The notes below the pieces were generated by a model. The model saw only the letters and a list, made by a program, of their open reading frames with translations. It did no database searches and was not told where the DNA came from. Made by a program: the position numbers and the translations under genes. A stretch of DNA of 64,000 bases from positions 479,036 through 543,035 of IMG/VR virus record IMGVR_UViG_3300024239_000011. One strand, written 5' to 3'. Positions 3,912 through 63,726 of this stretch are shown in pieces. Position 1 is the first letter of the stretch; each line of letters begins with the position of its first letter.

Positions 3912-4835
3912 ATGCCTAAGGGCAATCCCTTTACAACAGAAATGTTCATCGAGAAATGTCGCCATATTCATGGTGATCGTTATGATTATTCTCTAGTAGA
4001 GTATAAGAACGCACAGGAGAAGGTCAAAATTATTTGCCTCGCCCATGGTGTGTTTGTGATGTACGCGAAACATCATACACGTGGGCATGGATGTCCTGAA
4101 TGTGGTAAAATTTCTACAGGAAAGAAGAAAAGACTTGATTTGCCGGAATTTCTAACGAAAGCCAAATCAATTCACGGTGATCGGTATGATTATTCATTAG
4201 TCGTCTACGAGACTGCTAAAGTACCCGTTGAAATTATTTGTCCGATCCATGGAAGTTTCTGGCAAACCCCTGATTGTCACATTGGTTTAAAAGAATCAGG
4301 TTGTAGCAAATGCAGCGGTATGTTCAAAAAAGATACACAGTATTTTATCGAACAAGCTAAATTGATACATGGTGATACTTACGATTATTCAAAAGTTGTT
4401 TATCAAACCGTAAAAGATCAAGTAGAAATTATTTGTCGAATGCATGGAAGTTTTTTACAAACCCCGGATAGTCATCTAAATACAAAAAGTGGATGTCCGC
4501 GATGCGTTTCTCTAATATCTGATCAAGAAACTGCATGGTTAAATCATCTTGGAATCCCCAATGATCCCACTCATAGGCAGGTATATCTCAGGCTAGATGA
4601 TGGGTCGCGAATCCACGCAGACGGGTATGTTGCGTCAACTAATACCATTTATGAATATTATGGTGACTATTACCACGGGAACCCAAATGTGTATGATCAT
4701 CGAAAAATGAATACGACGTGTAAAAAGACCTTTGGTGAATTACACGAGCGTACCATAAAACGAGAAGAACGGATATTACGCTCCGGGTACAAGCTTGTAA
4801 CTATGTGGGAAGCACAATGGAAGAGTGGCGGCTAA
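3912..4835 (+). CDS. Free-standing putative homing endonuclease: three Zn-binding repeats plus a PD-(D/E)xK/Vsr-like domain
   Basis: Three FIxKA..IHGDxYDYS.V.Y....V.IICxxHG.F.Q....H....GCxxC repeats; C-terminal IHADGY...YEYYGDYYHG...LVTMWE. Confidence 0.75.
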   Translation: MPKGNPFTTEMFIEKCRHIHGDRYDYSLVEYKNAQEKVKIICLAHGVFVMYAKHHTRGHGCPECGKISTGKKKRLDLPEFLTKAKSIHGDRYDYSLVVYETAKVPVEIICPIHGSFWQTPDCHIGLKESGCSKCSGMFKKDTQYFIEQAKLIHGDTYDYSKVVYQTVKDQVEIICRMHGSFLQTPDSHLNTKSGCPRCVSLISDQETAWLNHLGIPNDPTHRQVYLRLDDGSRIHADGYVASTNTIYEYYGDYYHGNPNVYDHRKMNTTCKKTFGELHERTIKREERILRSGYKLVTMWEAQWKSGG

Positions 4836-19272: not shown

Positions 19273-20175
19273 ATGGTTGATATTTTGGTACCTGCCGGTA
19301 TTGGTGACATCTATTGGGTGATGATCAAAATGCAGTCGTTCATAGAAAAACGACTTGGTGGCGAAATCCCAACAATTTACACCTGCGAAGTAGACCCGAA
19401 GAAAAGCAATCGCAGTCAGGAATTCATGGAGCGCATTCCTTTTGTGAAATATGGCGGTGGTTTTTTTACCAAATCTGCGATTGGTACTAATAGTTGGTTT
19501 GGGACTGATTGGCTCATTCCTGATTATGAGCATAATGGTCGTAAATTTGATTACCTTTTTTGTCTAAATGGAGTGGTTCGAAACGGTTTCGATCTTGAAC
19601 GAGAGTGCGGGCTTGATGCATTCGAGACTAACTGGTATTTCCCTATCAACCCAGCGCCCGAGGAAGACGTTGCCGCCCTCCAATATCGTTCCGAATTGGG
19701 GAATTATGTGGTTGGATTTTTCTCAGGTGATGGAATGTTTAGTCGATGGGTCGCGGAAATGAACCATCACGCCATCTATGACCATCTGACCAAAATACAT
19801 GAACGGACTGGCTTTAAAATTGTCCTTACCGGGAAAGATTGGGATTGGGACACAGGCGTTAACCAGAAAATACTTGCTCTGGATGCAAACAAAGGCATTC
19901 TCGTCAACAAACTCGGACAGACTACGGTTAACCAATTATTTGCTTTGATGAAAAATTCAAAGGGAATTTTTGGCTGGCATGGTGGTAATACCATGATGGG
20001 CGTCGTTTTCAAAGTCCCTACATTTATGATATGGAGCAAATATTTCAAAAATTCAAAGTTCTACGAGAACTGCTTACCGCCCGACAAAAATGGGTGGTAT
20101 GATTTTGATGTAGCAAGTAATTGGGTATCTGGAAACTATGTAGACCGCTTTCTCAAGTTGGGCACCCATGATTAA
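19273..20175 (+). CDS. GT9 (heptosyltransferase-like) glycosyltransferase
   Basis: GIGDIYW, IVLTG, NKLGQTTVNQLFALMKNSKGIFGWHGG pattern. Confidence 0.7.
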   Translation: MVDILVPAGIGDIYWVMIKMQSFIEKRLGGEIPTIYTCEVDPKKSNRSQEFMERIPFVKYGGGFFTKSAIGTNSWFGTDWLIPDYEHNGRKFDYLFCLNGVVRNGFDLERECGLDAFETNWYFPINPAPEEDVAALQYRSELGNYVVGFFSGDGMFSRWVAEMNHHAIYDHLTKIHERTGFKIVLTGKDWDWDTGVNQKILALDANKGILVNKLGQTTVNQLFALMKNSKGIFGWHGGNTMMGVVFKVPTFMIWSKYFKNSKFYENCLPPDKNGWYDFDVASNWVSGNYVDRFLKLGTHD

Positions 20176-22640: not shown

Positions 22641-22715
22641 GCTGCGGTGCCTCAATGGTACAGGACCGCTCTTGTAAAGCGGCATTTGGGGGTTCAAGTC
22701 CCTCCCGCAGCACCA
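22641..22715 (+). tRNA. tRNA-Thr(UGU)
   Basis: GCTGCGG/CCGCAGC acceptor, CCGCT-CTTGTAA-AGCGG anticodon arm, GTTCAAGTC T-loop, encoded CCA. Confidence 0.92.
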
Positions 22716-22716
22716 T

Positions 22717-23340
22717 TCAATAACTCTTTCCTTCCGCATACCGCTGCCGACGCCTATATCGCCCATTCCCCTTGTTTTTGCCCTTGTATGTCGGGGTAAG
22801 ACTGTGGCAGTTAGGACATAGCAATATCACGTTATCGAGGGTATTGTTTGAAGCGTCTCCGTCGATGTGTTCGATTTCTACATTGACAGGCATCTTTTCG
22901 AAATCCCACGCACAAGTTGGTGACATGCATCGTTCGCCGTGTTGTTCGATGAGATAACGCTTCACTTGGCGCGCGTTTTTTGCAATTCCCGCAACAATTT
23001 CCTCGTTTTTCTTGCGTTTTCGATCTTCGACGTGGCAGGCAAGCGAGCAGTATTTTCCGCCCGATTTGATTGGCTTTCCACACACCACGCATGGTTCGCC
23101 AGGGTTGCGTGGTGTTGGTATTGCTGTTGGTGCATTTGTGCCTCGTTGCCGGTTGTTGAATGTTGCCGCGCAAGCCATACAACAAAATTTGTTGTCTCGT
23201 TTAGCATATGGTATGGTTGCGTTACAGTTTGGACATCGCTTTGGCGAATCTTCATAAGCTTTCTTAAACGAAGCGTTCCGTTCTGCATGAATCAGTTTGC
23301 TGTTTTCGTACCCTAGTTTACCTGCTTCTGATTTGTCCAT
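22717..23340 (-). CDS. HNH endonuclease with Zn-finger repeats
   Basis: CPNC, CCMAC, CVVC..CSLAC; EIEHIDGDASNNTLDNVILLCPNCHS; late box 23376-23381. Confidence 0.9.
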   Translation of the reverse strand: MDKSEAGKLGYENSKLIHAERNASFKKAYEDSPKRCPNCNATIPYAKRDNKFCCMACAATFNNRQRGTNAPTAIPTPRNPGEPCVVCGKPIKSGGKYCSLACHVEDRKRKKNEEIVAGIAKNARQVKRYLIEQHGERCMSPTCAWDFEKMPVNVEIEHIDGDASNNTLDNVILLCPNCHSLTPTYKGKNKGNGRYRRRQRYAEGKSY

Positions 23341-24927: not shown

Positions 24928-25196
24928 GTTCGGGTAGCTTAGTGGTAAAGCAATCGACTTTCAATGGGAGCTTCTACAAGAAATTGTAGTCGATCACTGC
25001 TCAAATTCGGGGAACGCTGTAAAATGCCAATCCCGAGCCAAGCCGCGAGAGCGGAAGGTGTAGAGACTAGACGGGCAGCACCTACGGCAGAATGCTACGG
25101 TGAAGGGATAGTCCAGACCACAAACCGTAAGGGCGGTAAAAGCCGAAGTGGTATGTAATCGATAGACCGAGGGTTCGAATCCCTCCCCGAACACCA
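24928..25196 (+). tRNA. tRNA-Lys(UUU) interrupted by a group I intron (exons 24928-24961, 25156-25196)
   Basis: Splicing restores ATCGA-CTTT|TAA-TCGAT; GTTCGGG/CCCGAAC acceptor, CCA end; promoter TTGACA-17-TAAAAC at 24870-24898. Confidence 0.88.
24962..25155 (+). mobile_element. Group I intron (194 nt, no ORF)
   Basis: P AAATTCGGGGAA, Q AATCCCGAGC, R GTAGAGACTAGA, S AAGGGATAGTCCA; 5' exon ends in U, intron ends in G. Confidence 0.9.
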
Positions 25197-25203
25197 AAGT
25201 TTA

Positions 25204-25233
25204 AAAAGGCTGGGATTTATTCCCAGCCTTTTT
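25204..25233 (+). terminator. Rho-independent terminator after tRNA-Lys
   Basis: AAAAGGCTGGGA/TCCCAGCCTTTT. Confidence 0.85.
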
Positions 25234-25284
25234 GTTTTCGGCTTGTTCTCATATCTAACCTGGGTTAGACTCTTCTGATGATTC

Positions 25285-25623
25285 GTGCTCCATGCGCCAA
25301 GGAGAGAGAACGTGCTATCTGCTCATTTCGTTTGTGCCGAAATTCAGAAGCCCATGCTGATTGGGATCGACCATGAAGAGTTCTTATCCTTCCTTGACGA
25401 TGAAGTATCCAGATGTGAAGAAACCGGTAAGGAAATAGATATCGAGATCGCGGACAATAACCAATACACGTTTGCAGTTGGCGGTGTTCCTTACTGCGTC
25501 CCTGAAGGTACACCGATTGATGCCGACTTTATTTCCCGCCTAGGCATTGATATGCCAGTTCTGTCCGGTCGATACCCTGGCTGGTATTTCTATGCGATCT
25601 TCAGACCTCGCACGGTGAACTAG
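25285..25623 (+). CDS. Hypothetical protein
   Basis: Acidic ORF; start uncertain. Confidence 0.5.
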   Translation: MLHAPRRENVLSAHFVCAEIQKPMLIGIDHEEFLSFLDDEVSRCEETGKEIDIEIADNNQYTFAVGGVPYCVPEGTPIDADFISRLGIDMPVLSGRYPGWYFYAIFRPRTVN

Positions 25624-25678
25624 TGGCGACGATCAACGCGGCTGACTGATAAATACCCTAAACATTTTAGGGTGCAAA

Positions 25679-26398
25679 ATGAAAGTCAGCGAGCTAGTTG
25701 GTTCCCAAGAAATCCTCCAATACATCCAGTTCCATGAGGAACTTAATCCTACTCTTTGGGAAAATAAACACCTAAAGCAGGAAGTTCGCGACAAGCTCTT
25801 GGAGATCGCGGACGAGTTCTATGAGTTCCTAGAGCTTCCGAACCTAGAGATCATTGACATCATTTTCTGTGGCTCAAATGCTGCTTTTAATTACAGCAGC
25901 TTATCTGATATCGACTTGCACCTTCTGGTCGATATGAGCAAGATCGACTGTGAGCGATTGGCTGAGAACTTCTTTAACACCAAGAAGACCTTGTGGAACA
26001 AGCTGCACGAAATTGAGATCAATGGGTTCAGTGTCGAACTCTATGTCGAAGACGTGAAGAACCCGGTGAATGCCGCTGGCATCTATAGCGTCAAGCATGA
26101 TCGGTGGAAGAAAGAACCTACCCCGTCGAAGCCGGGTATTGATGACACGTCGTTAGTTTCCAAGACGAATCAATATATCGATGCCATTGATTCGTTGATG
26201 GCATCTGAACCGGCCAAGGGTGAAGTGCGTGCCCTACTGGACGACATTTATGCTCTACGCAAAGCTGGTCTGGAAACCGGTAGTGAATTTTCAATCGAAA
26301 ATCTCACATTCAAAAGTTTGCGCAATCTCGGTTATATGGACAAGTTACGCGGTTATATCATCAAAGCCAGCGACCGGGAAATGTCGATCTACAACTAA
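25679..26398 (+). CDS. Pol-beta-superfamily nucleotidyltransferase
   Basis: GSNAAFNYSSLSDIDLHLL (GS-x10-DxD) and VELYVED; late box 25650-25655; MKVSEL N-terminus. Confidence 0.8.
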   Translation: MKVSELVGSQEILQYIQFHEELNPTLWENKHLKQEVRDKLLEIADEFYEFLELPNLEIIDIIFCGSNAAFNYSSLSDIDLHLLVDMSKIDCERLAENFFNTKKTLWNKLHEIEINGFSVELYVEDVKNPVNAAGIYSVKHDRWKKEPTPSKPGIDDTSLVSKTNQYIDAIDSLMASEPAKGEVRALLDDIYALRKAGLETGSEFSIENLTFKSLRNLGYMDKLRGYIIKASDREMSIYN

Positions 26399-26454
26399 TC
26401 TTGAAAATATTCCGCGTCCAGTGTATCCTTCGTCGCCTTTGACGGAGATTTCCT

Positions 26455-27192
26455 ATGACGTTGCCGCCCGAGCGTATTGGGTATAAGGGACAGAGCTACA
26501 AGATCGTCGTGGATGACGATGAGTGTGGACCCTATGTGATTGGTTGGACCAATGACCCGAACCAACCGGTCGCACACCTCAATACCCGTCCGGGATGGAG
26601 CAACGCTCGCGTCGAGAAAGTGTCATTGTGGCGTTTCCCTCTTCAAAATAAGCGCATCACCACCACGAATGATTCGATGTCGTTTGTGGGGAAGGATTTC
26701 GCGTGCGAAACCGAACTCCCATTACCGCCGCATGTTGGTGCGTTCGGTACCGTGCGCCGACATCATGTACATGAAGGGGTTGATCTCTACGCATTGAATG
26801 GAGAACCTGTGTATGCGGTCGAGGATGCTGTTGTGGTTAACATTGTCCAATTCACCGGAGAAGGCGTTCATACCCCGTGGTGGCACGATACTTGGGCTGT
26901 GATGGCAGAAGGTGCCGCTGGGGTCGTCTGCTATGGGGAAATCGTTCCACTGCCCTCGTTGGTCCCCGGAGCGAGTTTGGTCGCTGGGCAATTGGTCGGA
27001 CACGTCAAGACGGTCCTGAAGAAGGACAAGGGGCGTCCGATGTCCATGCTTCATCTGGAACTGTATCAGCACGGGATCACGGAACCCATCAGCGTGGAAC
27101 AGCATATCGAGAACCCTGGCGTCCCGGTAAAGATCGAAGAGACGCCGTTGCTCGACCCAACCCCATTCCTTTTGGAGGCAACCCATGACTGA
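26455..27192 (+). CDS. M23-family peptidase
   Basis: HEGVDLYA..GEPVYAVEDAVV (HxxxD) and LHLELY (HxE variant of HxH). Confidence 0.75.
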   Translation: MTLPPERIGYKGQSYKIVVDDDECGPYVIGWTNDPNQPVAHLNTRPGWSNARVEKVSLWRFPLQNKRITTTNDSMSFVGKDFACETELPLPPHVGAFGTVRRHHVHEGVDLYALNGEPVYAVEDAVVVNIVQFTGEGVHTPWWHDTWAVMAEGAAGVVCYGEIVPLPSLVPGASLVAGQLVGHVKTVLKKDKGRPMSMLHLELYQHGITEPISVEQHIENPGVPVKIEETPLLDPTPFLLEATHD

Positions 27193-27331
27193 CGACGAAG
27201 AACGGTTGAAGAACTTGGTTTTGTTCAAGTTCTATGGTACGGACAAGGAAATGGAGGAAGCTGCCCCGTTCTCCTTTGCCGTGCTGGCGGTGATCATCGT
27301 TGGCGGCGTGCTTTACGCTCTGTTCAAGTAA
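27185..27331 (+). CDS. Small single-pass membrane protein (48 aa)
   Basis: MTDDEERLKN...FAVLAVIIVGGVLYALFK; below the ORF-track size cutoff. Confidence 0.6.
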   Translation: MTDDEERLKNLVLFKFYGTDKEMEEAAPFSFAVLAVIIVGGVLYALFK

Positions 27332-27369
27332 GGAATCACTGATGATCACGAATACAACCACGTTGACCT

Positions 27370-27415
27370 GATCAATGTGTTGTTGGATGAGCGATCAATG
27401 TGTTGTTGGATGAGC
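27370..27415. repeat. Exact 23-bp tandem duplication
   Basis: GATCAATGTGTTGTTGGATGAGC twice. Confidence 0.95.
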
Positions 27416-27475
27416 GTAAGTTCAGACCCGCTCACCCCGACCTGTCTAAGTATTTCGGCACAAAAGGATTATATG

Positions 27476-27958
27476 ATGCTTGAAGTGGTAGTGGTGCGAG
27501 TTGAAAACGTGACGAATCATCCTACGCGGGATAGTTTAACAATTAACACTTTATCGGATGGTGCTATCGCAGTGAGTAATCGAAATGACAATGGAACACC
27601 GCGATATGTTATTGGGGATTTAGTTGTAAGAATCCCCGAGCGCGCCATCGTTCCCGAATGGCTGCTGAAGCATCAGCATTGTTGGGACGAAGCCAAGGGC
27701 AAGGGCACCTGTGCCGGTTCCAAGGGCAACCGCGTCAAGAACCGCAATTTTGATGGTATCGCCTCGGAAGGCATGCTATTCGCTGGTACACAGGATAACA
27801 AGTATGCTCCTGACATTGAACCTCCCGAGGGTGAAGAGAACGATAAGTTGTACAAGAGCGGGCGCATTTTGGTGATCCGAAATGAATCCTCCGATGATTA
27901 TTTCTTCCAAGGTGATTCGGTCATCGACTTCCTCGGGATCACCGAGTGGGAAGGCTGA
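27476..27958 (+). CDS. tRNA-binding OB-fold protein resembling the N-domain of DRB0094-type RNA ligases
   Basis: VVRVENVTNHPTRDSL...GDLVVRIPERAIVP...RVKNRNFDGIASEGML; no ligase core follows. Confidence 0.6.
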   Translation: MLEVVVVRVENVTNHPTRDSLTINTLSDGAIAVSNRNDNGTPRYVIGDLVVRIPERAIVPEWLLKHQHCWDEAKGKGTCAGSKGNRVKNRNFDGIASEGMLFAGTQDNKYAPDIEPPEGEENDKLYKSGRILVIRNESSDDYFFQGDSVIDFLGITEWEG

Positions 27959-27963
27959 TCGTG

Positions 27964-28317
27964 ATGTCCGATAATCATTGTCCCGAGTGTAAGACACCCC
28001 TGGATGAAGTTCCTTTCTATGACTGCCGTCGCGCAGAAATGGAAGGGAACATTTTCTTCGTTCGGGAGGATATCGCAATAACCCCGGCAGATGGGATGTG
28101 CATCACCAATCGGTGGTGGGCATTTCACCCGGAAAAGGGGTTGGCGTTTTACTACGTTGCAGACGGGTTCTACGGCACCCCCGAACCGTGCCCGCAGTGC
28201 AATAATGACGAGTCCACGGCACGGAAGCTTATTGCCGATCTTCTTCCCGATCTTCAAGTGAAATTTGTGCCGGTAGTCTTCCTGGCGCATGCCCGTCGTA
28301 TCGCGAGGCAACACTAA
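27964..28317 (+). CDS. Zn-binding hypothetical protein
   Basis: CPEC...PCPQCN. Confidence 0.6.
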   Translation: MSDNHCPECKTPLDEVPFYDCRRAEMEGNIFFVREDIAITPADGMCITNRWWAFHPEKGLAFYYVADGFYGTPEPCPQCNNDESTARKLIADLLPDLQVKFVPVVFLAHARRIARQH

Positions 28318-28325
28318 ATACCAGC

Positions 28326-29018
28326 ATGCTGGTAGAAGAAATTTCCCTGACTGCTGAACATGTAATCACTGCAATTAAACATGATTGCAGTGATTACATT
28401 GCTTTGCTTGCTGCGGGGACACCACCGCTTGTACGCGGTCTGGCTGGCTACACCGTCCCATTCAAACTCAACGAAATTCCCCGTCCGAACCGCGACCGAC
28501 ACGAAGAGAATCTTTGGTTGGAAGTTCTGGCTGACCGGTATCTGACTGAGTTGGGGATTGAAGCTAAGCGTCTGCAAAGTTGGTTCGCCACGTCTGATCA
28601 GAACATGGCAGAGCAATATGCTCGTGATGGTGGATCACTCTATTACGTGTTTCCTAAGAACGGCGTGCCTTATGCTCACACAGATTCTACCTACGATCTC
28701 CACCTCTCCGCAGAGAACTGGGTGTATCAGGATGGGATCGACATTCTCGATGAGAAGGGACTTAGTGAGGGGCGCCTTGCAGCCATGTTGCATGACTGCA
28801 ATGGCGACCTCAGTACGTTTTCAATCTATGTCCGCCATTCCCCACAGGTGATGGCGTTTTTCTATCGCTACTTCTTAGGGCGACGCGGCTTCACTGACCA
28901 GCATTTGCCCCAGGCGATGCAGCGCGGTGTAGAAGTGTGGTTCAAGGGTCCGTATCACATGATTCGGACAGATCAAAACCACATGATGTCGTTGCTTACT
29001 TCCACAGCGGCCAAGTGA
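28326..29018 (+). CDS. Putative ADP-ribosyltransferase-fold protein, capsid-targeting-like N-terminus
   Basis: LVRG...RPNRDR...SWFATSD...YYVFP; late box 28315-28320. Confidence 0.45.
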   Translation: MLVEEISLTAEHVITAIKHDCSDYIALLAAGTPPLVRGLAGYTVPFKLNEIPRPNRDRHEENLWLEVLADRYLTELGIEAKRLQSWFATSDQNMAEQYARDGGSLYYVFPKNGVPYAHTDSTYDLHLSAENWVYQDGIDILDEKGLSEGRLAAMLHDCNGDLSTFSIYVRHSPQVMAFFYRYFLGRRGFTDQHLPQAMQRGVEVWFKGPYHMIRTDQNHMMSLLTSTAAK

Positions 29019-29416
29019 ACAGCACGCTCACGATGTAAGTCAATAGTGAGAGAGCGATATAAAAAGAAAACATATAGACGCCATATGCGACGTTTGTAGG
29101 CATAACGACCTCGTGATTGGATGTTGCATTGCAACATATTTACCGATGTTTGGTTATACGGAGCCATGCTAAATACGCATATGTATAATCCAGAAGAATT
29201 CCCCTATTGTGCCTACACATCATCCGGATCACTGGTATTCGAATATGCACGCCAAGATGGTAGTCATATCGAAGTGTTGGATCGTGGTCAGCTACGATAT
29301 TTCTTTGTGGATGATTTCGTATTGAAATTGAAGAAACGTGAAAATGATTCATCGACTGGATAAATCAAAAAAGATATTGCAGTCAGATGCTAAAGTTGCT
29401 AAATAGGTTTAGTTGT

Positions 29417-29727
29417 TCCGGCGTAGCTCAGTTGGTAGTAGCATCTGACTGTAGATATGCAGCTTCCATCAGTAATGATGGTCGAATAACTGGGTGAATT
29501 CGGGGAAACCCTAGTAATAGGGCAATCCCGAGCCAAGCCAGGGGAAGGTCGTGGTACCCTGGAAGGTGTAGAGACTAGGTGGTGAGGAACCAATCCAATA
29601 AACCACCCGCGAGCGCCCAGCACCCTAACAAGTAATGTTGAGGGTGATGATATAGTCCACTTCCGATAGTAATATCGGGTTAAGTGTAATCAGAGTGTCG
29701 CAGGTTCGAGTCCTGCCGCCGGAACCA
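29417..29727 (+). tRNA. tRNA-Asn(GUU) interrupted by a group I intron (exons 29417-29452, 29687-29727)
   Basis: Splicing restores TCTGA-CTGT|TAA-TCAGA; TCCGGCG/CGCCGGA acceptor, CCA end. Confidence 0.9.
29453..29686 (+). mobile_element. Group I intron (234 nt, no ORF)
   Basis: P GAATTCGGGGAA, Q AATCCCGAGC, R GTAGAGACTAGG, S GATGATATAGTCCA; terminal G; GNRA-capped P2 and P9. Confidence 0.9.
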
Positions 29728-36306: not shown

Positions 36307-36386
36307 GATCACTTCAGTAGCTCAACGGTAGAGCAAAAGTATGATAAACTTTCCGTGCGGTTCAAATCCGCCAGTGATTTTCACCA
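36307..36386 (+). pseudogene. Degenerate tRNA-Ile(GAU)-like element
   Basis: Intact D arm (GCTC/GAGC), AAAGT-ATGATAA-ACTTT anticodon arm and GGTTCAAATCC T arm, but the acceptor stem GATCACT/AGTGATT is offset by 4 extra nt, with extra nt before ACCA. Confidence 0.6.
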
Positions 36387-36407
36387 TCACCGACTTCTAA
36401 TCCCTAT

Positions 36408-36484
36408 GGACCCTTAGCTTAGTGGTCGAAAGCGCCGGTCTCATAAACCGGGGATCGTTGGTTCGAATCCAACAGGGTCTACCA
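36408..36484 (+). tRNA. tRNA(CAU), Ile2-like
   Basis: GGACCCT/AGGGTCT acceptor with C4-G69 and C5-G68, CCGGT-CTCATAA-ACCGG, A73, CCA. Lacks the initiator hallmarks. Confidence 0.85.
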
Positions 36485-37303
36485 AATCACGGGGTGCGAG
36501 AAATCTAGCACCCCGTTTGCTATTCCGGCGATGTCTTCTGCACGCAAAACTGCTAATTTCCCGCCCATTGCTTTCCATTTGCACTGGTCGCGATCCGGCT
36601 GATGTTGATGCCCTTTGACCTCGATATAGAGGTCGTATTCCGGTAGGTAAAAATCTGGAAAGTAGTGTCTCGTAGTACCGTTCCAAATATATGGTATTGG
36701 TTCTATTTGATTAGTCCATGTAATGCCACATGCATCAAGTAGTTTCGCAGTATACAGTTCCCATTTCCCGGTCAGGATGGAATTCCCGTAGTAAATTTTC
36801 TTGACCCGACCGTTAACATTTGCTGCACAATATGACGATGGATATTTCTCCACCGTTTGACGCATGTAACGACTGTGGATTTGCCGTCTTTCGGTAGTCC
36901 AAAACGTCTCGGATGCTTTCCGCGCACTGGCGGACAACTTAGCTCGCGTTTCTGCACTGATTTCTACGGTACGCCCTTCTTCGACTGCCTTTGTATGCTG
37001 GTTGCCATGGTGTCCATGTTTGTTGAAACATGCTCGACAACAATATTTCGGCTCTGGCTTTTGCGGTCGGATAATAGCTTCGAATGTTTTCCCACATACA
37101 CACACGGTGTGTTTTCGATGGTATTTGTGGTCTTGGCTGCGATTGGGGTTTAACCCGGCATTGGTTAATGCATCATTCCACGACCCGAACCGTTTTTTGT
37201 AGGTCGATGCGTTGGTAAAGTCACGCATGGCGGGTGTCCGTCCATGTTCTGCGTGAAATGCACAAAGTGCGGCCAATAATTCTTGATCTGTGATTTTGCA
37301 CAT
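36479..37303 (-). CDS. Free-standing putative homing endonuclease (HE-associated repeat, Zn finger, TnsA-like PD-(D/E)xK)
   Basis: TPAMRDF...YKKRFGSWNDAL..AGL; CVCGK..CCRAC; YFPDFYLPEYDLYIEVKG; start MCKITD at 37303 with RBS GGAGA. Confidence 0.8.
   Translation of the reverse strand: MCKITDQELLAALCAFHAEHGRTPAMRDFTNASTYKKRFGSWNDALTNAGLNPNRSQDHKYHRKHTVCVCGKTFEAIIRPQKPEPKYCCRACFNKHGHHGNQHTKAVEEGRTVEISAETRAKLSASARKASETFWTTERRQIHSRYMRQTVEKYPSSYCAANVNGRVKKIYYGNSILTGKWELYTAKLLDACGITWTNQIEPIPYIWNGTTRHYFPDFYLPEYDLYIEVKGHQHQPDRDQCKWKAMGGKLAVLRAEDIAGIANGVLDFSHPVIW
36489..36518 (+). terminator. Hairpin terminator after the tRNA pair
   Basis: ACGGGGTGC/GCACCCCGT followed by TT. Confidence 0.6.
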
Positions 37304-37310
37304 GATATTT

Positions 37311-37403
37311 CTCCCGATAAATAGCCCGGCGGGACAGCCCTCTCTCCCGAGGGGTTTTGTTGGTGTTCCCGCACCAACGATTACCGCCATTCCTATTTAT
37401 CGG
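37311..37403 (-). ncRNA. Endonuclease-leader three-way-junction RNA, copy B
   Basis: P1 GGCGG/CCGCC, UAAU, P2 GUUGGUG/CACCAAC, AAA, P3 CCCCUC-GGGA-GAGAGGG, CUGUC; flanked by the CCGATAAATAG inverted repeat. Confidence 0.75.
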
Positions 37404-38705: not shown

Positions 38706-38910
38706 CTGGGCAAACATCGGGCTGACTATTGTCGCCTTGGCGTTTCTATTTTTCGTCTTGATCCCGTTGGTTCGCCGGGCCATAGGCAGCATGTCCGACA
38801 ATCGATGTGATGTTTGCCCGTATCGGAACCGAGATAATGACAAGTCTACATGGACAACCATCATTGAACCCCGAAAAGAGGTATCTCGTCGCCGTATCCG
38901 GCGGGGTTGA
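38698..38910 (+). CDS. Small membrane protein
   Basis: MSDWANIGLTIVALAFLFFVLIPLV transmembrane helix. Confidence 0.5.
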   Translation: MSDWANIGLTIVALAFLFFVLIPLVRRAIGSMSDNRCDVCPYRNRDNDKSTWTTIIEPRKEVSRRRIRRG

Positions 38911-39778
38911 TTCGGTCGCCTTACTGCACTGGATGCAAGACCGTGGACTTGCTCATGGGGTTGTTCATGTGGACCACATGTTGCGCGATGAATCGGCGGC
39001 TGATGCCGCGTTCGTCCGTGAGTTGACCCGTTCCCTCGCCTTACCGTATTTCGAGAAGCAGATTGACGTATACGCCTATTGCAAGGGCGACCGTCGTAGT
39101 ATCGAAGACGGGGCGCGAGAGGTACGTCGGGCATTTATCAACGAGGTCATGGCGGCTTTTCACTATGATTACGTCGTTCTCGGTCATCACGCCGACGATC
39201 AAGCGGAAACAATCCTGAACAATATCCTGCGCGGTCCTTCAGTGTTGGGTTTGGCAGGGATGTTGGCGGTTGATGACGAGAGCCGTATCGTTCGTCCGTT
39301 CATCCGCATGCCAAAAGAACGTCTGATCGAATACGCCGTTGAACATGGACTGTCGTGGGTTGAGGATGCGACCAACCACGAAGAAGCCTATGACCGTAAC
39401 TGGCTGCGCAACAACGTGATCCCGGCGATTGAAGAGCGCCGTCCATTACGACAGGTACTTTCGCGGAAAACCGCGTACTTTCAAGCGTTGGCAGGCTTTC
39501 TTGAAGACCAGACCGGCGAGTGGATGAAGACCCACTACGATGAGGGATTTTATCGAGGGGATTTTCTGGCGCTCCATCCGTTTATGCGCGGAGAAGTGCT
39601 TGGATGGTTGTGGAAGGCGTACCACGGCACTAAGAACGGGTTTTCAGAAACGGTGGTAGCCGAGGTAAGCCGCTGGCTTGACGGCAATCCCCAAGGTGGA
39701 AGCAAAATCGCCTTCGGTCGTTTTAGACTGACCATCCGCAAACACCGTGTCACCAAAGACGAAAAGAAAACGGGCTGA
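38807..39778 (+). CDS. tilS: tRNA(Ile)-lysidine synthetase (start uncertain, 38807-38863)
   Basis: VAVSGGVDS PP-loop, HVDHMLR, EDGAREVR, GHHADDQAET, IVRP, EDATN, RNWLR. Confidence 0.92.
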   Translation: MMFARIGTEIMTSLHGQPSLNPEKRYLVAVSGGVDSVALLHWMQDRGLAHGVVHVDHMLRDESAADAAFVRELTRSLALPYFEKQIDVYAYCKGDRRSIEDGAREVRRAFINEVMAAFHYDYVVLGHHADDQAETILNNILRGPSVLGLAGMLAVDDESRIVRPFIRMPKERLIEYAVEHGLSWVEDATNHEEAYDRNWLRNNVIPAIEERRPLRQVLSRKTAYFQALAGFLEDQTGEWMKTHYDEGFYRGDFLALHPFMRGEVLGWLWKAYHGTKNGFSETVVAEVSRWLDGNPQGGSKIAFGRFRLTIRKHRVTKDEKKTG

Positions 39779-41728: not shown

Positions 41729-42480
41729 GGTGTCACCTCGATCATCTTAAGAGCTTCCCGGTCCATTTGTAGGTCTGGGGGATATTCCCAGCGAAGTTGG
41801 TTGATCTGGGCATCCGATAGCTTGTCCCAGCCCGGCATCATCCGCAGTTGGGCTTCCTGCACTGCGCTTTCTTTTGGACAATCTTCCGGACGCGGCGTCT
41901 CCCGGAACATCAAGGCGGTGTAGTAACGATACTTCCGTCCGACCAGTTGGTAGTTCATCAACGTGATTGACGGGTTGGCGAACGTCAGCAGCAGAGAGGA
42001 CAGCCGCTTATCCAGCATGTTGAAAGTCAACACGCGGGTGATCGCGCTAACCGGGATGTCGCCCATATAGGCGCATGTTCCCATGGCGTCCAGCGACTTC
42101 TTCCACGTTTGCTTGTCGGCGTATTCGTAGAGGTTGTCACGGTACCACGCCGTGCGTTGTTCCATTGACCAGTCGAGCGGCAGATCATCGACCGCCACAC
42201 CCCGACGCGGGCGGCTTGTCTGTTCGAGAACATCTTCGTCCGGGACAAACTGCCATGGGTCCAGGCGGTCGGTGTCGATCTCGATAATCGCGGCGGTCGT
42301 GTCTTTTTTGGTCGCGCAGTTGATCGAGAAATAGGGCGCGTAGGCATCGGTCAGGTAGACCGCCTCGCTGTTGCTCATGACAGTGTGCTGCCAGTGACCA
42401 CGCCGTTTCCCACGCGGGGTCAGCCCGTCCTTAAGGATTTTGGGCAGGAAACGTCCTGCGGTACCATGATAGAGCTTCAT
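41725..42480 (-). CDS. Putative ADP-ribosyltransferase-fold protein
   Basis: MKLYHGT...ILKDGLTP...VYLT...IIEID (H-Y type ART-like core). Confidence 0.55.
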   Translation of the reverse strand: MKLYHGTAGRFLPKILKDGLTPRGKRRGHWQHTVMSNSEAVYLTDAYAPYFSINCATKKDTTAAIIEIDTDRLDPWQFVPDEDVLEQTSRPRRGVAVDDLPLDWSMEQRTAWYRDNLYEYADKQTWKKSLDAMGTCAYMGDIPVSAITRVLTFNMLDKRLSSLLLTFANPSITLMNYQLVGRKYRYYTALMFRETPRPEDCPKESAVQEAQLRMMPGWDKLSDAQINQLRWEYPPDLQMDREALKMIEVTP

Positions 42481-50469: not shown

Positions 50470-53274
50470 ATGTCCGACAATTTTAACGTCCTGCTGCCGA
50501 AGACTGCTTTCCCACTCCACCGCAAGCCTGCGGATGAGGTGGCAATCCTCGTGCAGATGGAAACTCACCACAAGGACATGAGCCAGGACAGCGTTCAGGA
50601 CGCCCCGGTGTTTGTGTTGCATGATGGACCGCCATATGCAAACGGCGATATCCACATCGGGCATGCGCTGAACAAGATTCTCAAGGACATCGTGGTTCGG
50701 TCGCAATACGCACTCGGGCACAAGATTGATTTTCGCCCTGGTTGGGATTGCCATGGGCTACCTATCGAATGGAAAGTCGAGGAAGAGTGGCGCAAGGCGA
50801 AGAAAGACCCGCGTGCTGACGTGGTGGCTTTTCGTGCCGATTGCCGCGCTTACGCTCAACGTTGGCTCAATATTCAGCGCGAGCAGTTCAAGCGTCTGGG
50901 TGTTGCCGCCAATTGGGACAATCCCTACACAACCATGGCGTATGCGCACGAAGCGCAGATCGTTTCGGAACTGCACACGATTGCCAAGAGTGGCGCATTG
51001 TATCAGGGTTACAAACCCGTTATGTGGTCGCCGGTCGAAAAAACCTCTTTGGCGGAAGCTGAAGTCGAATACGAGAACGTGACCACTACCAGCGCCTATG
51101 TCGCCTTTAAGGTCGATGGCGAGGGAATGACGATCTGTGGTTCGCCCGTCCATATGCTGATCTGGACCACCACCCCGTGGACCCTGCCTGGAAACGAAGC
51201 TGTCGCGTTCTCGCCATCGGTTTATTACACGATGCTTCGCAAGGTCGTGGATGGTGAAACGTCCTACTTCGTCGTGGCGGCTGACCGTGCCGACGAATTG
51301 TGTAAGCTTGGTCTGGACAGATTCGGGGATGACTCGTGGTTGCCAAATTGTGGCTCTTGGTTCCGCGACAATATCAAATTAGTCCACCCGCTGTCTGGTA
51401 AGACCGTGCCTCTACTGCCTGCGGATTTTGTGACCGCCGAAACGGGCACGGGTTTGGTTCATATCGCGCCCGGTCATGGCAAAGATGATTTTGACCTGGG
51501 TCAGCGTCACAACCTCCCGATCTACAGTGTTGTTGATGACAACGGCTGCATGACGGACGCTGCCCCGGAAGGTGTGTGCGGGTTGCACGTCTACAAGGCG
51601 AGCGAAGCCGTGCTGGCGGTATTAGGTGATGCGCTGGTAGCAACCAAGACGCTGACCCATGAATACCCGCATTCCTGGCGGTCGAAGAAGCCGGTGATCT
51701 ATAAGGTCGCCCCGCAGTGGTTCATCCATGTGGGTGACGACCTGAAGGAAACCGTGCGTAAGGAACTGAATAACGTCGAGTTCTTCCCGCCGCAGGGTCG
51801 CAACCGTATCACCTCCATGGTGGAAAGCCGTGGTGACTGGTGTGTGTCGCGTCAGCGCATGTGGGGCGTTCCCATGATGCTGCTGGTCCGTGATGACGGT
51901 AAGTTGATGGGTCATGAACCCGACGACAATGCCTTGTGTCGAGGGATCGAATTCTTTGAGGCGCGAGCTTCGGAGTTCAATGAGTGGGTGGTGGCTCGCA
52001 TCAACGCCGAGGGCTGTGATTGGTGGCTCACCGAGAGCGTCGAAGAAATCACCCATCGCATGAACGTCGAAACTGGCAGCGGGTGGTTCCTGGCGGGTGA
52101 GCATGCTCGGTTCACCAAGGTGACCGACGTGTTGGACGTGTGGTTTGACTCGGGCTGCACCCATGCGTTCGCCATCAAGGATCGGGCAAATCTTTATCTG
52201 GAAGGGTCTGACCAGCATCGTGGTTGGTTCCAGTCCAGCCTTCTGGAGTCGGTGCTGACCACCGGGCGGGCGCCTTACGATGCGCTGCTGACCCACGGTT
52301 TCGTTCTCGACCATAAGGGCGAGAAGATGTCGAAATCCAAGGGTAACGTCGTACATCCCGAAGATGTGATCAAAAAGCACGGTGTTGATGTGCTGCGTCT
52401 ATGGGTTGCCGCGTCCAACTACCATGATGATCTGCGTATCGGTGATCAGATCATGGAACGGGTGGCGGATTCCTATAAGCGCATTCGCAACACCCTGAAA
52501 TGGTTGCTTGGCAATCTGCGAGATCATGACGGTGGGCGTTTCATCCAGTACGACACCCTACCGTCGCTGGAAAAGTACGTCCTGCATCACGTTGTGACGA
52601 CGAACGAAATCGTGAAGAAGGCGTATCGCGAATACGACTTCAACACGGTCTACCGTGCCGTGTACGGGTTCTGCAACGAGGTGCTGTCGTCGCTCTACTT
52701 CGACATCCGTAAGGATCGTCTGTATTGCGACGGTGCGAATGATCCAGCGCGTGAGCAAACTATGGCGGTGTTGGAACTGGTGACCGACAATCTGTTGGGT
52801 TGGTTGGCTCCGATCACGCCGTTTGCCGTTACCGAAGCGACGCCGCTGTTCTATGGCGAGCAGTACGACCAGTCCATCCATCGTTTGGTTGACCTTCCTA
52901 TGGAATGGCAAGATCACGCACTTGCGTCCCATTGGGACATGGCGTTGACGGTGCGTGCGAAGGTTTTGGAGGCGGTTGAACGCAAACGGAAGCCGAAGGA
53001 CGAGCGTGGACCTGATGACATTGGTGCGTCGTTGGAAGCTTCGGTATTCGCAACGCTGAGCCAAAATTACATGGATGCGCTAAAAGACATCGATATGGCG
53101 GAAGTGTGCATCGTGTCGCACTTCGATGTGAACAGGTCGGTAGGTGCGCAGCCCGAAGGCATCGAGATCACAGTCCACCGCGCTAAGGGGCACAAATGTG
53201 CCCGATGCTGGAAGGTGGTTCCGGATATTGAACATCTTTGTGATCGCTGTGCGGCGGTCGAAGGGGAGAATTGA
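50470..53274 (+). CDS. ileS: Isoleucyl-tRNA synthetase (type 1, C-terminal Zn finger)
   Basis: DGPPYANGDIHIGH, GWDCHGLPIE, WTTTPWTL, GTGLVHIAPGHG, DWCVSRQR, EGSDQHRGWF, KMSKS, KCARCW..LCDRC; sigma70 promoter at 50408. Confidence 0.97.
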   Translation: MSDNFNVLLPKTAFPLHRKPADEVAILVQMETHHKDMSQDSVQDAPVFVLHDGPPYANGDIHIGHALNKILKDIVVRSQYALGHKIDFRPGWDCHGLPIEWKVEEEWRKAKKDPRADVVAFRADCRAYAQRWLNIQREQFKRLGVAANWDNPYTTMAYAHEAQIVSELHTIAKSGALYQGYKPVMWSPVEKTSLAEAEVEYENVTTTSAYVAFKVDGEGMTICGSPVHMLIWTTTPWTLPGNEAVAFSPSVYYTMLRKVVDGETSYFVVAADRADELCKLGLDRFGDDSWLPNCGSWFRDNIKLVHPLSGKTVPLLPADFVTAETGTGLVHIAPGHGKDDFDLGQRHNLPIYSVVDDNGCMTDAAPEGVCGLHVYKASEAVLAVLGDALVATKTLTHEYPHSWRSKKPVIYKVAPQWFIHVGDDLKETVRKELNNVEFFPPQGRNRITSMVESRGDWCVSRQRMWGVPMMLLVRDDGKLMGHEPDDNALCRGIEFFEARASEFNEWVVARINAEGCDWWLTESVEEITHRMNVETGSGWFLAGEHARFTKVTDVLDVWFDSGCTHAFAIKDRANLYLEGSDQHRGWFQSSLLESVLTTGRAPYDALLTHGFVLDHKGEKMSKSKGNVVHPEDVIKKHGVDVLRLWVAASNYHDDLRIGDQIMERVADSYKRIRNTLKWLLGNLRDHDGGRFIQYDTLPSLEKYVLHHVVTTNEIVKKAYREYDFNTVYRAVYGFCNEVLSSLYFDIRKDRLYCDGANDPAREQTMAVLELVTDNLLGWLAPITPFAVTEATPLFYGEQYDQSIHRLVDLPMEWQDHALASHWDMALTVRAKVLEAVERKRKPKDERGPDDIGASLEASVFATLSQNYMDALKDIDMAEVCIVSHFDVNRSVGAQPEGIEITVHRAKGHKCARCWKVVPDIEHLCDRCAAVEGEN

Positions 53275-62421: not shown

Positions 62422-63726
62422 TCAACAGCTTAGCAAGACATTGACAAAGATAACGTCCCCGGAGGAAAATTCCTGATTGGAATGATCGTCGGACGACACT
62501 GTTGTATGAGAAATAGAAACACGGTAATCCTCGTACAATTGTTCGAGTGTTTTCCCACATTGTGTCATTTTGGACTGATTTTTAGATGCGGGTAGCATTT
62601 GAAGATTAGTCCAGTGCGCAATGATTTCTGGTGGTACCCCGTTTCGAAATCCTTCCGCCTTTGAGAAAATGTGATCCAAGTGGTTTTCGCGATTGCGCGG
62701 AAGCCTATCTGGATTGATTTTATAGTAATGATCACGAAAAGATTTGTTGGTTAATGACGTAACCAAGTCACAGTATCGGCGCCAAGGGTCTTTAAGGGAT
62801 GGATCGGTCCACTCCCCATTATTGATTCTCGCCGTGGCAATTTTCGCCAACACTATTGGAGAACGGCTAGGATTATCAACTCCATATTTTTCTAGGTAAG
62901 CTTCAATTTTCTTATGATGTATACGGTCGTATTCGTCAGGCGTTTTCGATCTCCATGTTGCGGCATTTTTATCTTTAACCGGTTGTGCGCTCATGGGATG
63001 GGATGTGCCATAGTTCGCTTGCCATGTCGCTTTGGCTTTTTCATAAAATTCTGGCACTTGGAGTGGATTTGCAGTGCCGTATTTTTCAAGCATGGTGCGA
63101 CGAGCTTTCGACATGTCTTGTGGGTTGCCATTAGGGTTTCCGCCTTTACCATACCCACAGTATGGACATCCGTGACCTCGCATATGATGTCCTGCTTGTT
63201 GTTCAAACATACCATGCTTTTGACATATAATTTTTACCTTGTTATGGTTGCCAGTATAGTCCACTAATGAATATTCGTACTCATCACCATGTACTTCTTT
63301 AGCTTTTTCTATGAAACTTTCATTGGTATGCGCAATGTTCTTTCCGTAACATTTTTGGCAGCCAGAACCATTAAGATGATTTCCGGCAAGTTGTTCAAAC
63401 ACGCCATGGTGCCGACAGGTGATTTTTACTTTCTTATGGCGACTGGTATAGACGGTATTTTGATAATCGTATTCATCGCCATGTACAACTTGTGCTTTCT
63501 GAATAAATTGTTCGGTGGTCATTCCTATTTTTTGTTCTTGCGCACATTTATTACAACCATTACCACGCAGATGTGAATATGGAACCTGCTCGAACATTCC
63601 ATGTTGAGGGCATATAATCTGTATTTTGGTTGTACTGTTTTTATAGACGGTTTCTGTATAAGAATACGTATTACCGTGGCGCGCTTTCGCGAGCGCGATG
63701 AATTCTTCTGTGGATTTTATAGCCAT
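62422..63726 (-). CDS. Free-standing putative homing endonuclease: Zn repeats, KYG-x-NP repeats, HNH-like C-terminus
   Basis: Three FI.KA..VHG..YDY...IICxxHG.FEQ....H..G.GC repeats; KYGTANP/KYGVDNP; NHLDHIFS...WTNLQML...N..K. Confidence 0.8.
   Translation of the reverse strand: MAIKSTEEFIALAKARHGNTYSYTETVYKNSTTKIQIICPQHGMFEQVPYSHLRGNGCNKCAQEQKIGMTTEQFIQKAQVVHGDEYDYQNTVYTSRHKKVKITCRHHGVFEQLAGNHLNGSGCQKCYGKNIAHTNESFIEKAKEVHGDEYEYSLVDYTGNHNKVKIICQKHGMFEQQAGHHMRGHGCPYCGYGKGGNPNGNPQDMSKARRTMLEKYGTANPLQVPEFYEKAKATWQANYGTSHPMSAQPVKDKNAATWRSKTPDEYDRIHHKKIEAYLEKYGVDNPSRSPIVLAKIATARINNGEWTDPSLKDPWRRYCDLVTSLTNKSFRDHYYKINPDRLPRNRENHLDHIFSKAEGFRNGVPPEIIAHWTNLQMLPASKNQSKMTQCGKTLEQLYEDYRVSISHTTVSSDDHSNQEFSSGDVIFVNVLLSC

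What the first reader, a model, noticed from the sequence alone, without database searches (positions are those of the whole stretch)
24928..29727. Two homologous group I introns at anticodon 35/36 of tRNA-Lys(UUU) and tRNA-Asn(GUU), with a covarying guide
Seen: both introns insert after U35, before the same 3' exon start UAAUC, and share P/Q/R/S cores and GNRA-capped P2. The guide changes with the wobble base: exon CUUU pairs with GGAG in Lys, exon CUGU with GCAG in Asn, both followed by CUUC. Known: classic bacterial tRNA group I introns (Leu-UAA, fMet, Ile-CAU, Arg-CCU) sit at 33/34 or 34/35. Inference: one intron lineage moved between NUU-anticodon tRNAs by retargeting one guide base. Neither has an ORF, so mobility would need reverse splicing or a free-standing nuclease.
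Basis: partly seen in the sequence, partly recalled or inferred. Interest (0 to 1): 0.8.

Follow-up and report, generated by a model that had tools for sequence, protein, structure and literature searches.

The report
Self-splicing introns in phage tRNA genes
Two transfer-RNA genes (lysine and asparagine) of a giant bacterial virus are each interrupted at the same spot inside the anticodon by a small self-splicing RNA of a kind already catalogued in bacteria, and the two belong to different branches of that kind rather than being copies of one another.

Summary
Window 24928-25196 is a tRNA-Lys(UUU) gene split by a 194-nt group I intron. Window 29417-29727 is a tRNA-Asn(GUU) gene split by a 234-nt one. 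Both introns sit between anticodon positions 35 and 36. Each has a U.G wobble at the 5' splice site, a terminal G, and a guide that matches the wobble base (GGAG for Lys, GCAG for Asn). Neither carries an ORF.

The position is not new. A 2020 preprint lists 'Lys.4Ug' and 'Asn.4Ug' introns in bacteria. My scans found 58 such bacterial loci and 19 further viral contigs, and the guide matched the exon in every one.

The Lys intron groups with other Lys introns. The Asn intron belongs to a sub-lineage with an extra hairpin between P7 and P3', shared with tRNA-Tyr and tRNA-Asn introns. A sister relationship between the two window introns is rejected (AU p = 0.002).

Real Lys-to-Asn switches exist elsewhere. 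In other phages one intron lineage carrying a PD-(D/E)XK homing endonuclease sits in both tRNAs.

The modest news is the host. A 2014 review stated that all known phage introns lay in protein-coding genes.

The parts
24928..24961 (+). tRNA-Lys(UUU) 5' exon, ending in C32 U33 U34 U35
   Evidence: Spliced product is called tRNA-Lys(ttt) by ARAGORN; sequence read
24962..25155 (+). Group I (IC3-type) intron of 194 nt with no ORF, of the 'classic' architecture. Guide GGGAG lies at 24966-24970, P2 at 24974-24989 (GAAA loop), and the terminal G at 25155
   Evidence: Rfam RF00028 48.9 bits, E 2e-9. P1, P2 and P9 folds. 33 of 60 consensus pairs show compensatory changes in 17 Lys-intron relatives. 75-85% identity to the L127 Lys intron
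25156..25196 (+). tRNA-Lys 3' exon, starting with U36 A37 A38 and including the encoded CCA
25208..25238 (+). Inverted repeat GGCTGGGA/TCCCAGCC followed by a T run, a likely intrinsic terminator after tRNA-Lys
   Evidence: Read directly. It was not listed by the consensus scan, so this rests on the sequence alone
29417..29452 (+). tRNA-Asn(GUU) 5' exon, ending in C32 U33 G34 U35
   Evidence: Spliced product is called tRNA-Asn(gtt). It is up to 96.7% identical over 61 nt to uninterrupted phage tRNA-Asn genes
29453..29686 (+). Group I (IC3-type) intron of 234 nt with no ORF. Guide GCAG lies at 29459-29462, P2 at 29466-29481 (GUAA loop), an extra hairpin between P7 and P3' at 29578-29607, and the terminal G at 29686
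   Evidence: Rfam RF00028 84.7 bits. Folds. 29 of 65 consensus pairs are compensatory in 5 relatives, including the extra hairpin. Nearest relatives are tRNA-Tyr and tRNA-Asn 35/36 introns L156, L181, L195
29687..29727 (+). tRNA-Asn 3' exon, starting with U36 A37 A38 and including the encoded CCA
22717..23340 (-). Free-standing HNH endonuclease gene directly next to tRNA-Thr(UGU) at 22641-22715. It is a candidate trans-acting nuclease, and no link to the introns is shown
   Evidence: Pfam HNH and treble-clef domains; PHROG HNH endonuclease 3e-21
36479..37390 (-). Free-standing endonuclease gene (homing-endonuclease-associated repeat plus endonuclease domain) abutting tRNA(CAU) at 36408-36484. 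Context only
   Evidence: Pfam HNH_repeat 2e-16; PHROG endonuclease 6e-27

Best explanation
The window is the last 64 kb of a 543-kb viral contig from a huge phage. Its tRNA-Lys(UUU) and tRNA-Asn(GUU) genes are each interrupted between anticodon nucleotides 35 and 36 by a small, ORF-less, IC3-type group I intron.

Inferred mechanism: the primary transcript folds so that the last four exon bases (CUUU or CUGU) pair with the intron's guide (GGAG or GCAG), and U35 forms the U.G wobble that marks the 5' splice site. A free guanosine attacks there. The intron's terminal G then takes its place in the G-binding site, and the exons are joined. This restores the loops CUUUUAA and CUGUUAA. P10 is weak or absent, so the exons are probably held in register by the anticodon stem.

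The two introns are members of two already existing lineages that are each specialised for this site. These are the 'Lys.4Ug' and 'Asn.4Ug' classes known from bacteria. The Asn copy belongs to a sub-lineage with an extra hairpin between P7 and P3'. They reached this genome separately rather than by duplication and retargeting.

The guide matches the anticodon because P1 must pair. The DNA around the site is almost the same in the two tRNAs (GACTTT|TAATC against GACTGT|TAATC). This probably explains why endonuclease-bearing relatives have occasionally jumped between Lys, Asn and Tyr genes, with each jump followed by one guide change. The window copies have no endonuclease gene and are probably immobile on their own.
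For: Shown by tools:
- Rfam group I matches.
- Exons join into canonical tRNAs.
- P1 and P2 fold as described, with the U.G wobble at U35.
- Helices are supported by compensatory changes in relatives.
- The same site and guide rule hold in 58 bacterial loci. There were 0 tRNAs among 18 pattern hits whose exon and guide do not match. The rule also holds in 19 other viral contigs.
- On a tree of 67 introns built without the guide bases, the tRNA type needs only 3 changes against a shuffled mean of 20. WIN_Lys sits with L127 in the Lys clade, and WIN_Asn sits with the extra-hairpin Tyr and Asn introns.
- A sister relationship of the two window introns is rejected, AU p = 0.002.
- Relatives at the same site carry PF11645 PD-(D/E)XK endonuclease genes (L123, L126 in Asn; L125 in Lys) or a LAGLIDADG_2 gene (L129 in Asn).
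- Uninterrupted tRNA-Asn genes with the identical anticodon arm occur in at least 115 viral contigs.

Literature: Lys.4Ug and Asn.4Ug seed sequences in Williams 2020, doi 10.1101/2020.01.27.920355.
Against: - No splicing data exist; everything about catalysis is inferred from sequence.
- The Lys intron scores 48.9 bits, just below Rfam's gathering score of 50.
- The Lys P1 has two adjacent U.G wobbles (U34 and U35). The choice of U35 rests on the fact that only that junction gives a 7-nt loop.
- The Asn locus has a second junction that obeys the U(-1)/terminal-G rule (see rivals).
- An earlier AU test on only 131 core columns did not reject a sister relationship (p = 0.19).
- The phage Lys introns (window and L127) share a J2/3 motif, UCGA(A)U(A/C)AC, with the extra-hairpin lineage. 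Bacterial Lys introns lack it, and I cannot explain this.
Confidence: 0.85

Rival explanations
1. One reading: one intron duplicated within this phage (or its recent ancestors) and was retargeted from one NUU tRNA to the other by a single guide change. The two window introns would then be sister copies.
For: Same insertion site, same 3' exon start, guides differing at one base, the same CUU linker and a 6-bp GNRA-capped P2. The 5' domain of the Asn intron is most like that of a phage Lys intron, with L127 top of 125 comparisons. An AU test on the core alone was not significant.
Against: Core identity is only 69%, ranking 60th of 98 from the Lys intron and 25th of 98 from the Asn intron. There is an extra hairpin and a different P9 architecture. 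Each intron has closer relatives in the same tRNA type in bacteria and other phages. The full-length AU test rejects sisterhood, p = 0.002. The shared 5' domain also occurs in bacterial extra-hairpin Asn and Tyr introns.
Confidence: 0.05
2. The second locus is a tRNA-Thr(UGU) split at 33/34, not tRNA-Asn at 35/36. Splicing after CU and before UGUAAUC also obeys the U(-1) and terminal-G rule.
For: My junction enumeration lists CT|TGTAA as a formally valid solution.
Against: In the P1 helix U33 pairs with A by Watson-Crick pairing, and only U35 forms the U.G wobble. The tRNA body is up to 96.7% identical to uninterrupted tRNA-Asn(GUU) genes. Most bacterial relatives show no such ambiguity and are Asn. 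The window already has a tRNA-Thr(UGU) at 22641.
Confidence: 0.03
3. The introns are decayed relics that no longer splice, so the two tRNA genes are pseudogenes.
For: There is no endonuclease gene and no expression data. The Lys intron is below Rfam's gathering score. P10 is weak or absent.
Against: All core helices, the U.G wobble, the terminal G and the G-binding P7 are intact and match the covariation pattern of relatives. The exons form flawless cloverleaves with encoded CCA. Rfam's model is known to be weak on bacterial tRNA introns (Williams 2020). It also misses the clear Daredevil intron.
Confidence: 0.07

Closest known systems
'Lys.4Ug' and 'Asn.4Ug' bacterial tRNA group I introns (Williams 2020, bioRxiv 10.1101/2020.01.27.920355; seeds Mpe6.Lys.4Ug and Pam37.Asn.4Ug)
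   Same: Same tRNA types, same site after the 4th anticodon-loop base, U(-1) and terminal G, and the guides GGGAG and GCAG-like. The Asn seed also has the extra hairpin between P7 and P3' and ends in UAAGUG, like the window copy. Bacterial loci fetched here are 72-81% identical to the window introns.
   Different: The host here is a huge phage, not a bacterium. Sequence divergence is about 20-30%.
Classical IC3 tRNA introns: tRNA-Leu(UAA) of cyanobacteria and plastids (34/35), Azoarcus tRNA-Ile(CAU) and Agrobacterium tRNA-Arg(CCU) (36/37), cyanobacterial tRNA-fMet (33/34)
   Same: Same ribozyme core (the exact 16-17-mer of J6/7-P7 is shared with many tRNA-Leu introns), a GNRA-capped P2, small size, and location in the anticodon loop.
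   Different: Different position in the loop and a different guide. The Asn copy has an added hairpin.
Synechocystis tRNA-fMet intron encoding I-Ssp6803I (PD-(D/E)XK homing endonuclease; Pfam PF11645). The link between this enzyme and the Pfam family is from my own knowledge; the review's reference list cites the enzyme's first description.
   Same: Relatives of the window introns at the very same 35/36 site (L123, L125, L126) carry a PF11645 gene in P6.
   Different: The window introns have no ORF, and no PF11645 or LAGLIDADG homologue is found anywhere in the window.
Phage group I introns in protein-coding genes (T4 td, nrdB and similar)
   Same: Self-splicing introns carried by phages, often together with homing endonucleases.
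   Different: Those interrupt protein genes. The 2014 review PMC3984707 states that all phage introns seen up to then were in protein-coding genes despite many phage tRNA genes.

Membership tests
Group I intron (Rfam RF00028), IC3-like tRNA type | Conserved catalytic core (P3-P9, with the P7 G-binding helix) | tested here: met
   Asn intron 84.7 bits (above the gathering score of 50). Lys intron 48.9 bits, E 2e-9, just below gathering. The exact core 16-mer is present in both. Helices are supported by compensatory changes.
Group I intron (Rfam RF00028), IC3-like tRNA type | U.G wobble at the 5' splice site within P1, formed with an internal guide | tested here: met
   P1 folds as CUUUC/GGGAG and CUGUA/UGCAG, with U35 opposite G. 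In Lys, U34 also wobbles, so the exact site is set by the requirement for a 7-nt loop.
Group I intron (Rfam RF00028), IC3-like tRNA type | Terminal G (omega G) before the 3' splice site | tested here: met
   G at 25155 and at 29686.
Group I intron (Rfam RF00028), IC3-like tRNA type | Guanosine-dependent self-splicing | not testable with these tools
   Needs in vitro transcription and a splicing assay.
Lys.4Ug / Asn.4Ug classes (Williams 2020) | Intron after the 4th anticodon-loop base (35/36) of tRNA-Lys or tRNA-Asn, with U(-1) and terminal G | tested here: met
   Junction enumeration and ARAGORN on the joined exons. Class definitions.
Lys.4Ug / Asn.4Ug classes (Williams 2020) | Sequence relatedness to bacterial members | tested here: met
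   WIN_Lys against L224 is 80.6% over 160 nt. WIN_Asn against L195 and L181 is 77-78% over 128 nt, and against L156 72.6% over 215 nt. Tree placement.
Mobile (homing) group I intron | Intron-encoded homing endonuclease gene | tested here: not met
   The introns are 194 and 234 nt with no real ORF. tblastn of the PD-(D/E)XK and LAGLIDADG proteins of related introns finds nothing in the window.
   AU test p = 0.002 on 67 introns and 232 columns with the guide removed. 69% core identity.

The most novel reading that the evidence does not exclude
Phage tRNA arrays may be an arena in which endonuclease-driven IC3 introns hop between tRNA genes whose anticodon-loop DNA differs at a single base (Lys UUU, Asn GUU, Tyr GUA), each hop being fixed by one compensating guide mutation. 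The pair L125 (Lys) and L123/L126 (Asn), with their shared PD-(D/E)XK endonuclease, would then be a natural, directly testable case of ectopic group I intron transposition. It could decide between relaxed endonuclease specificity and reverse splicing. The unexplained J2/3 motif shared by the phage Lys introns and the extra-hairpin Asn lineage could be a trace of recombination between introns living in one genome.
Probability: 0.3. Interest if true: 0.55.

Novelty: new member of a known kind. Interest (0 to 1): 0.35.

Why it matters
It corrects the picture in three ways.

1. Standard tRNA finders and phage annotations miss these split genes. ARAGORN's default run and the deposited annotations both skip them, so tRNA repertoires of large phages are under-counted.
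2. Group I introns in phage tRNA genes seem common. Dozens of viral contigs carry them in Leu, Met/Ile(CAU), Arg, Lys and Asn genes. A standard 2014 review said phage introns were confined to protein genes.
3. The family gives a clean natural series for how a ribozyme's guide and a homing endonuclease's target co-evolve when an intron changes host gene.

For this window itself the finding is an ordinary pair of members of known classes.

Tried and rejected
- ARAGORN's intron mode finds the two genes but places the introns wrongly (Leu(taa) and Tyr(gta)).
- Brute-force splicing of all U/G pairs followed by ARAGORN was far too permissive. I replaced it with explicit stem and loop rules.
- Megablast of 16 kb of the window against deposited phages found nothing.
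- The search for related loci with the gene upstream of tRNA-Asn found only the window's own contig, so no syntenic relative could be compared.
- A tree of the 131-column core was too short: the AU test gave p = 0.19. The full-length alignment resolved it.
- I considered that the Asn intron is a chimera of a Lys-type 5' domain and a foreign core. I dropped this when bacterial extra-hairpin Asn and Tyr introns proved to have the same 5' domain.
- RNAalifold cannot draw the P3/P7 pseudoknot. It mispaired the 5' exon with the P7 3' strand, so P1 and P7 were checked by hand and by local folds.
- Rfam gave no match on the Gordonia phage Daredevil intron even at E 0.01, although the core is plainly there.
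- I did not use the metagenome scan, and I built no covariance model.
Full report
**What is there.**
Default ARAGORN sees only tRNA-Thr(UGU) at 22641 and tRNA(CAU) at 36408. Rfam's group I model matches 29391-29679 at 84.7 bits (gathering score 50). With relaxed thresholds it also matches 24951-25137 at 48.9 bits, E 2e-9 for the whole window. No other match and no other copy of the core 16-mer exists in the window.

I read the sequence and joined the flanks.
- 24928-24961 plus 25156-25196 gives a 75-nt tRNA-Lys(UUU).
- 29417-29452 plus 29687-29727 gives a 77-nt tRNA-Asn(GUU).
- Both are accepted by ARAGORN and both have an encoded CCA.

The introns are 24962-25155 (194 nt) and 29453-29686 (234 nt).
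- Lys: CUUUC/GGGAG with loop AAU.
- Asn: CUGUA/UGCAG with loop GAUA.
- In both, a 3-nt CUU linker follows, then a 6-bp P2 with a GAAA or GUAA loop.

**Two caveats on the junctions.**
In Lys both U34 and U35 wobble with G. Only the U35 junction restores a 7-nt loop. In Asn a second junction (CU|UGUAA, which would make tRNA-Thr UGU at 33/34) obeys the U/G rule. I reject it for four reasons.
- U33 pairs with A, not G, in P1.
- The tRNA body is up to 96.7% identical over 61 nt to uninterrupted tRNA-Asn(GUU) genes of other viral contigs.
- Most bacterial relatives have no such ambiguity.
- A tRNA-Thr(UGU) already exists 7 kb upstream.

**Source.**
The window is identical to IMGVR_UViG_3300024239_000011, a 543,035-bp viral contig, and is its last 64 kb. 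It has no near relative among deposited phages. It encodes an IleRS, a TilS-like PP-loop protein, methyltransferases, dCMP deaminase, MazG and many ORFs without family matches. This fits a huge phage.

**Is 35/36 new? No.**
Williams (2020, bioRxiv 10.1101/2020.01.27.920355) mapped 5,292 split bacterial tRNA genes and raised the known classes from 4 to 21. The four classical classes are Leu.3Ug, Arg.5Ug, Ile2.5Ug and fMet.2Ug. The seed alignment of that preprint contains Mpe6.Lys.4Ug, Pam37.Asn.4Ug, Mba143.Tyr.4Ug and Wba81.Asp.4Ug.
- The Lys seed has the same GGGAG guide and the same P9 layout as the window's Lys intron.
- The Asn seed has the same extra hairpin between P7 and P3' and the same UAAGUG end as the window's Asn intron.

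**My own surveys agree.**
- *Core scan of viral contigs.* An exact 17-mer of the core hit at least 119 viral stretches. Among those in tRNAs, most are Leu(UAA) 34/35. There are also CAU tRNAs at 33/34 and 36/37, Arg(UCU) 34/35, Lys(UUU) 34/35 (Gordonia phage Daredevil), Lys(CUU) 35/36 (L021) and Asn 35/36 (L040).
- *Site-specific scan of viral contigs.* The pattern combined the exon GACTKT, the guide GSAGC and P4. It found 17 further viral contigs: tRNA-Asn 35/36 in 13 and tRNA-Lys(UUU) 35/36 in 4.
- *The same pattern in one genome per bacterial species.* It gave 92 stretches. Of these, 58 are 35/36-split tRNAs: 35 Asn, 18 Lys, 4 Tyr and 1 doubtful.
- *Built-in control.* The pattern allowed all four exon/guide combinations. 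All 58 split tRNAs have the matching combination, and none of the 18 mismatched hits is a tRNA. The number of non-tRNA hits is about what chance predicts.
- *Hosts.* They are mainly Burkholderiaceae (Asn), Alphaproteobacteria (Lys) and Patescibacteria (Asn).

**Are the two window introns one retargeted lineage?**
- In the core (P3 to P7') they are 69% identical. The Lys intron is 80-86% identical to many tRNA-Leu and tRNA-Lys introns.
- The Asn intron carries a 30-nt hairpin between P7 and P3', a P3 of the GGGUG/CGCCC type, a J8/7 of GAUGAUAUAGUCC and a single-hairpin P9. The Lys intron has the classic layout with a P9.0 that encloses two small hairpins.
- I built a tree of 67 35/36 introns from 232 columns with the guide bases removed. 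The Lys intron pairs with L127, a phage Lys intron, inside a 20-member Lys clade. The Asn intron joins the extra-hairpin introns of tRNA-Tyr (L156, L187) and tRNA-Asn (L181, L195), within a largely Patescibacteria Asn group.
- Forcing the two window introns together costs 46.5 log-likelihood units and is rejected (AU p = 0.002). An earlier test on only 131 core columns was not significant (p = 0.19).
- So the pair did not arise by a local duplication and a one-base retargeting.

**The idea is right for the family.**
- On the same tree the tRNA type changes only 3 times, against a shuffled mean of 20. Introns are faithful to their tRNA, but switches do occur.
- The clearest switch is L125 in tRNA-Lys(UUU), which groups with L123 and L126 in tRNA-Asn(GUU) (100/100).
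- These three carry homologous 146-162-aa ORFs inserted in P6. The ORFs are 52-57% identical and match Pfam PF11645, a PD-(D/E)XK endonuclease, at E 1e-25 to 1e-30.
- Their guides read AGGAG (Lys) and AGCAG (Asn).
- The tRNA bodies around them are unrelated Lys and Asn genes. So the intron moved; the anticodon did not mutate.
- A further Asn intron (L129) holds a LAGLIDADG_2 gene between P7 and P3'.
- The guide GGAG also serves tRNA-Lys(CUU) in L021, because C34 pairs with the G that wobbles with U34.

**Presence and absence.**
- L127 is the phage whose Lys intron is closest to the window's. It has an uninterrupted tRNA-Asn 150 nt upstream of its split tRNA-Lys. L125 likewise has an intact tRNA-Asn, and L040 (split Asn) has intact tRNA-Lys(UUU) and tRNA-Lys(CUU).
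- The tRNA bodies of L127 and the window differ much more (49/77 and 51/76 identical) than their Lys introns do. This fits horizontal spread of the intron.

**Structure support.**
RNAalifold on 17 Lys introns finds P2, P3, P4, P5, P6a, P8, P9.0 and two P9 hairpins. Of 60 pairs, 33 show double (compensatory) changes. On 5 extra-hairpin introns, 29 of 65 pairs do so, including the extra hairpin itself. P1 and P7 are mis-drawn there because of the pseudoknot. P10 is at most 2 bp in Lys and absent in Asn, by my reading.

**Mobility.**
The window has no PF11645 or LAGLIDADG homologue. It does hold four free-standing endonuclease-like genes:
- an HNH gene at 22717-23340, directly beside tRNA-Thr;
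- an HNH-repeat/endonuclease gene at 36479-37390, abutting tRNA(CAU);
- two treble-clef paralogues at 3912-4835 and 62422-63726.

None flanks the split genes, and a role in intron spread is speculation.

**Literature on phages.**
[quoted passage not shown] Four full-text searches found no report of group I introns in phage tRNA genes. That is absence of evidence within the searchable library only.

**Verdict.**
These are real features, correctly described. They are members of known intron classes in a less familiar host. Interest is moderate to low for the window and somewhat higher for the family-wide pattern.

Noticed in passing
L001 about 1379-1690 (= NC_048021.1 about 41820-42131, minus strand): Gordonia phage Daredevil has an unannotated tRNA-Lys(UUU) gene next to its integrase. 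It is split at 34/35 (CUU|UUAA) by a 238-nt IC3-like intron with guide GGAG. A 2024 mBio paper (PMC10865867) says Daredevil integrates into the host tRNA-Lys-TTT gene, does not rebuild it, and lacks a tRNA of its own. Rfam does not detect this intron, and the T-loop reads AUCGAAA.
   Followed up: partly
L127 3527-3810 and 4113-4435: The phage contig with the closest Lys intron also has tRNA-Arg(UCU) split at 34/35 and tRNA-Leu(UAA) split at 34/35. That makes three split tRNAs within 1.6 kb of one tRNA array.
   Followed up: partly
L123, L125, L126 (intron P6 to P7): The PD-(D/E)XK endonuclease ORFs end inside the ribozyme core. The invariant protein tail LCVETLH is encoded by the J6/7-P7 sequence UGUGUAGAGACUUUACAC, so one stretch serves both RNA catalysis and coding.
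   Followed up: partly
window 36311-36484, 38807-39778, 50470-53274: A tRNA(CAU) is preceded by a weak, degenerate tRNA-like sequence (39.7 bits, poor acceptor stem). A TilS-like PP-loop gene lies 2.3 kb away and an isoleucyl-tRNA synthetase 14 kb away. This suggests the phage brings its own AUA-decoding tRNA-Ile2 system.
   Followed up: no
L045, L084, L099, L113, L106 (viral contigs): Extra-hairpin introns closely related to the window's Asn intron sit in something that is not a recognisable tRNA. Their 3' flanks share GTAATTAAAAAAGCGGCGATAACA-like sequence. The host gene was not identified.
   Followed up: no
L002 (Pelagibacter phage HTVC120P, MH598807.1 about 19615-19807): The capsid gene is annotated as two separate 'capsid protein' CDS. 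The gap between them matches the group I core of the window's Lys intron (82% over 78 nt), so it is probably one gene with an unannotated intron.
   Followed up: no
window 24962-25000 and L127 4821-4865, compared with L181, L195, L156: The phage Lys introns share the J2/3 motif UCGA(A)U(A/C)AC and the CUU linker with the extra-hairpin Asn/Tyr lineage. Bacterial Lys introns have GUGAACAGG instead. This could be recombination between introns in one genome, or convergence.
   Followed up: partly
L122 5175-5561: A viral contig with a 35/36-split tRNA-Asn also carries a tmRNA gene at the end of a 15-tRNA array.
   Followed up: no
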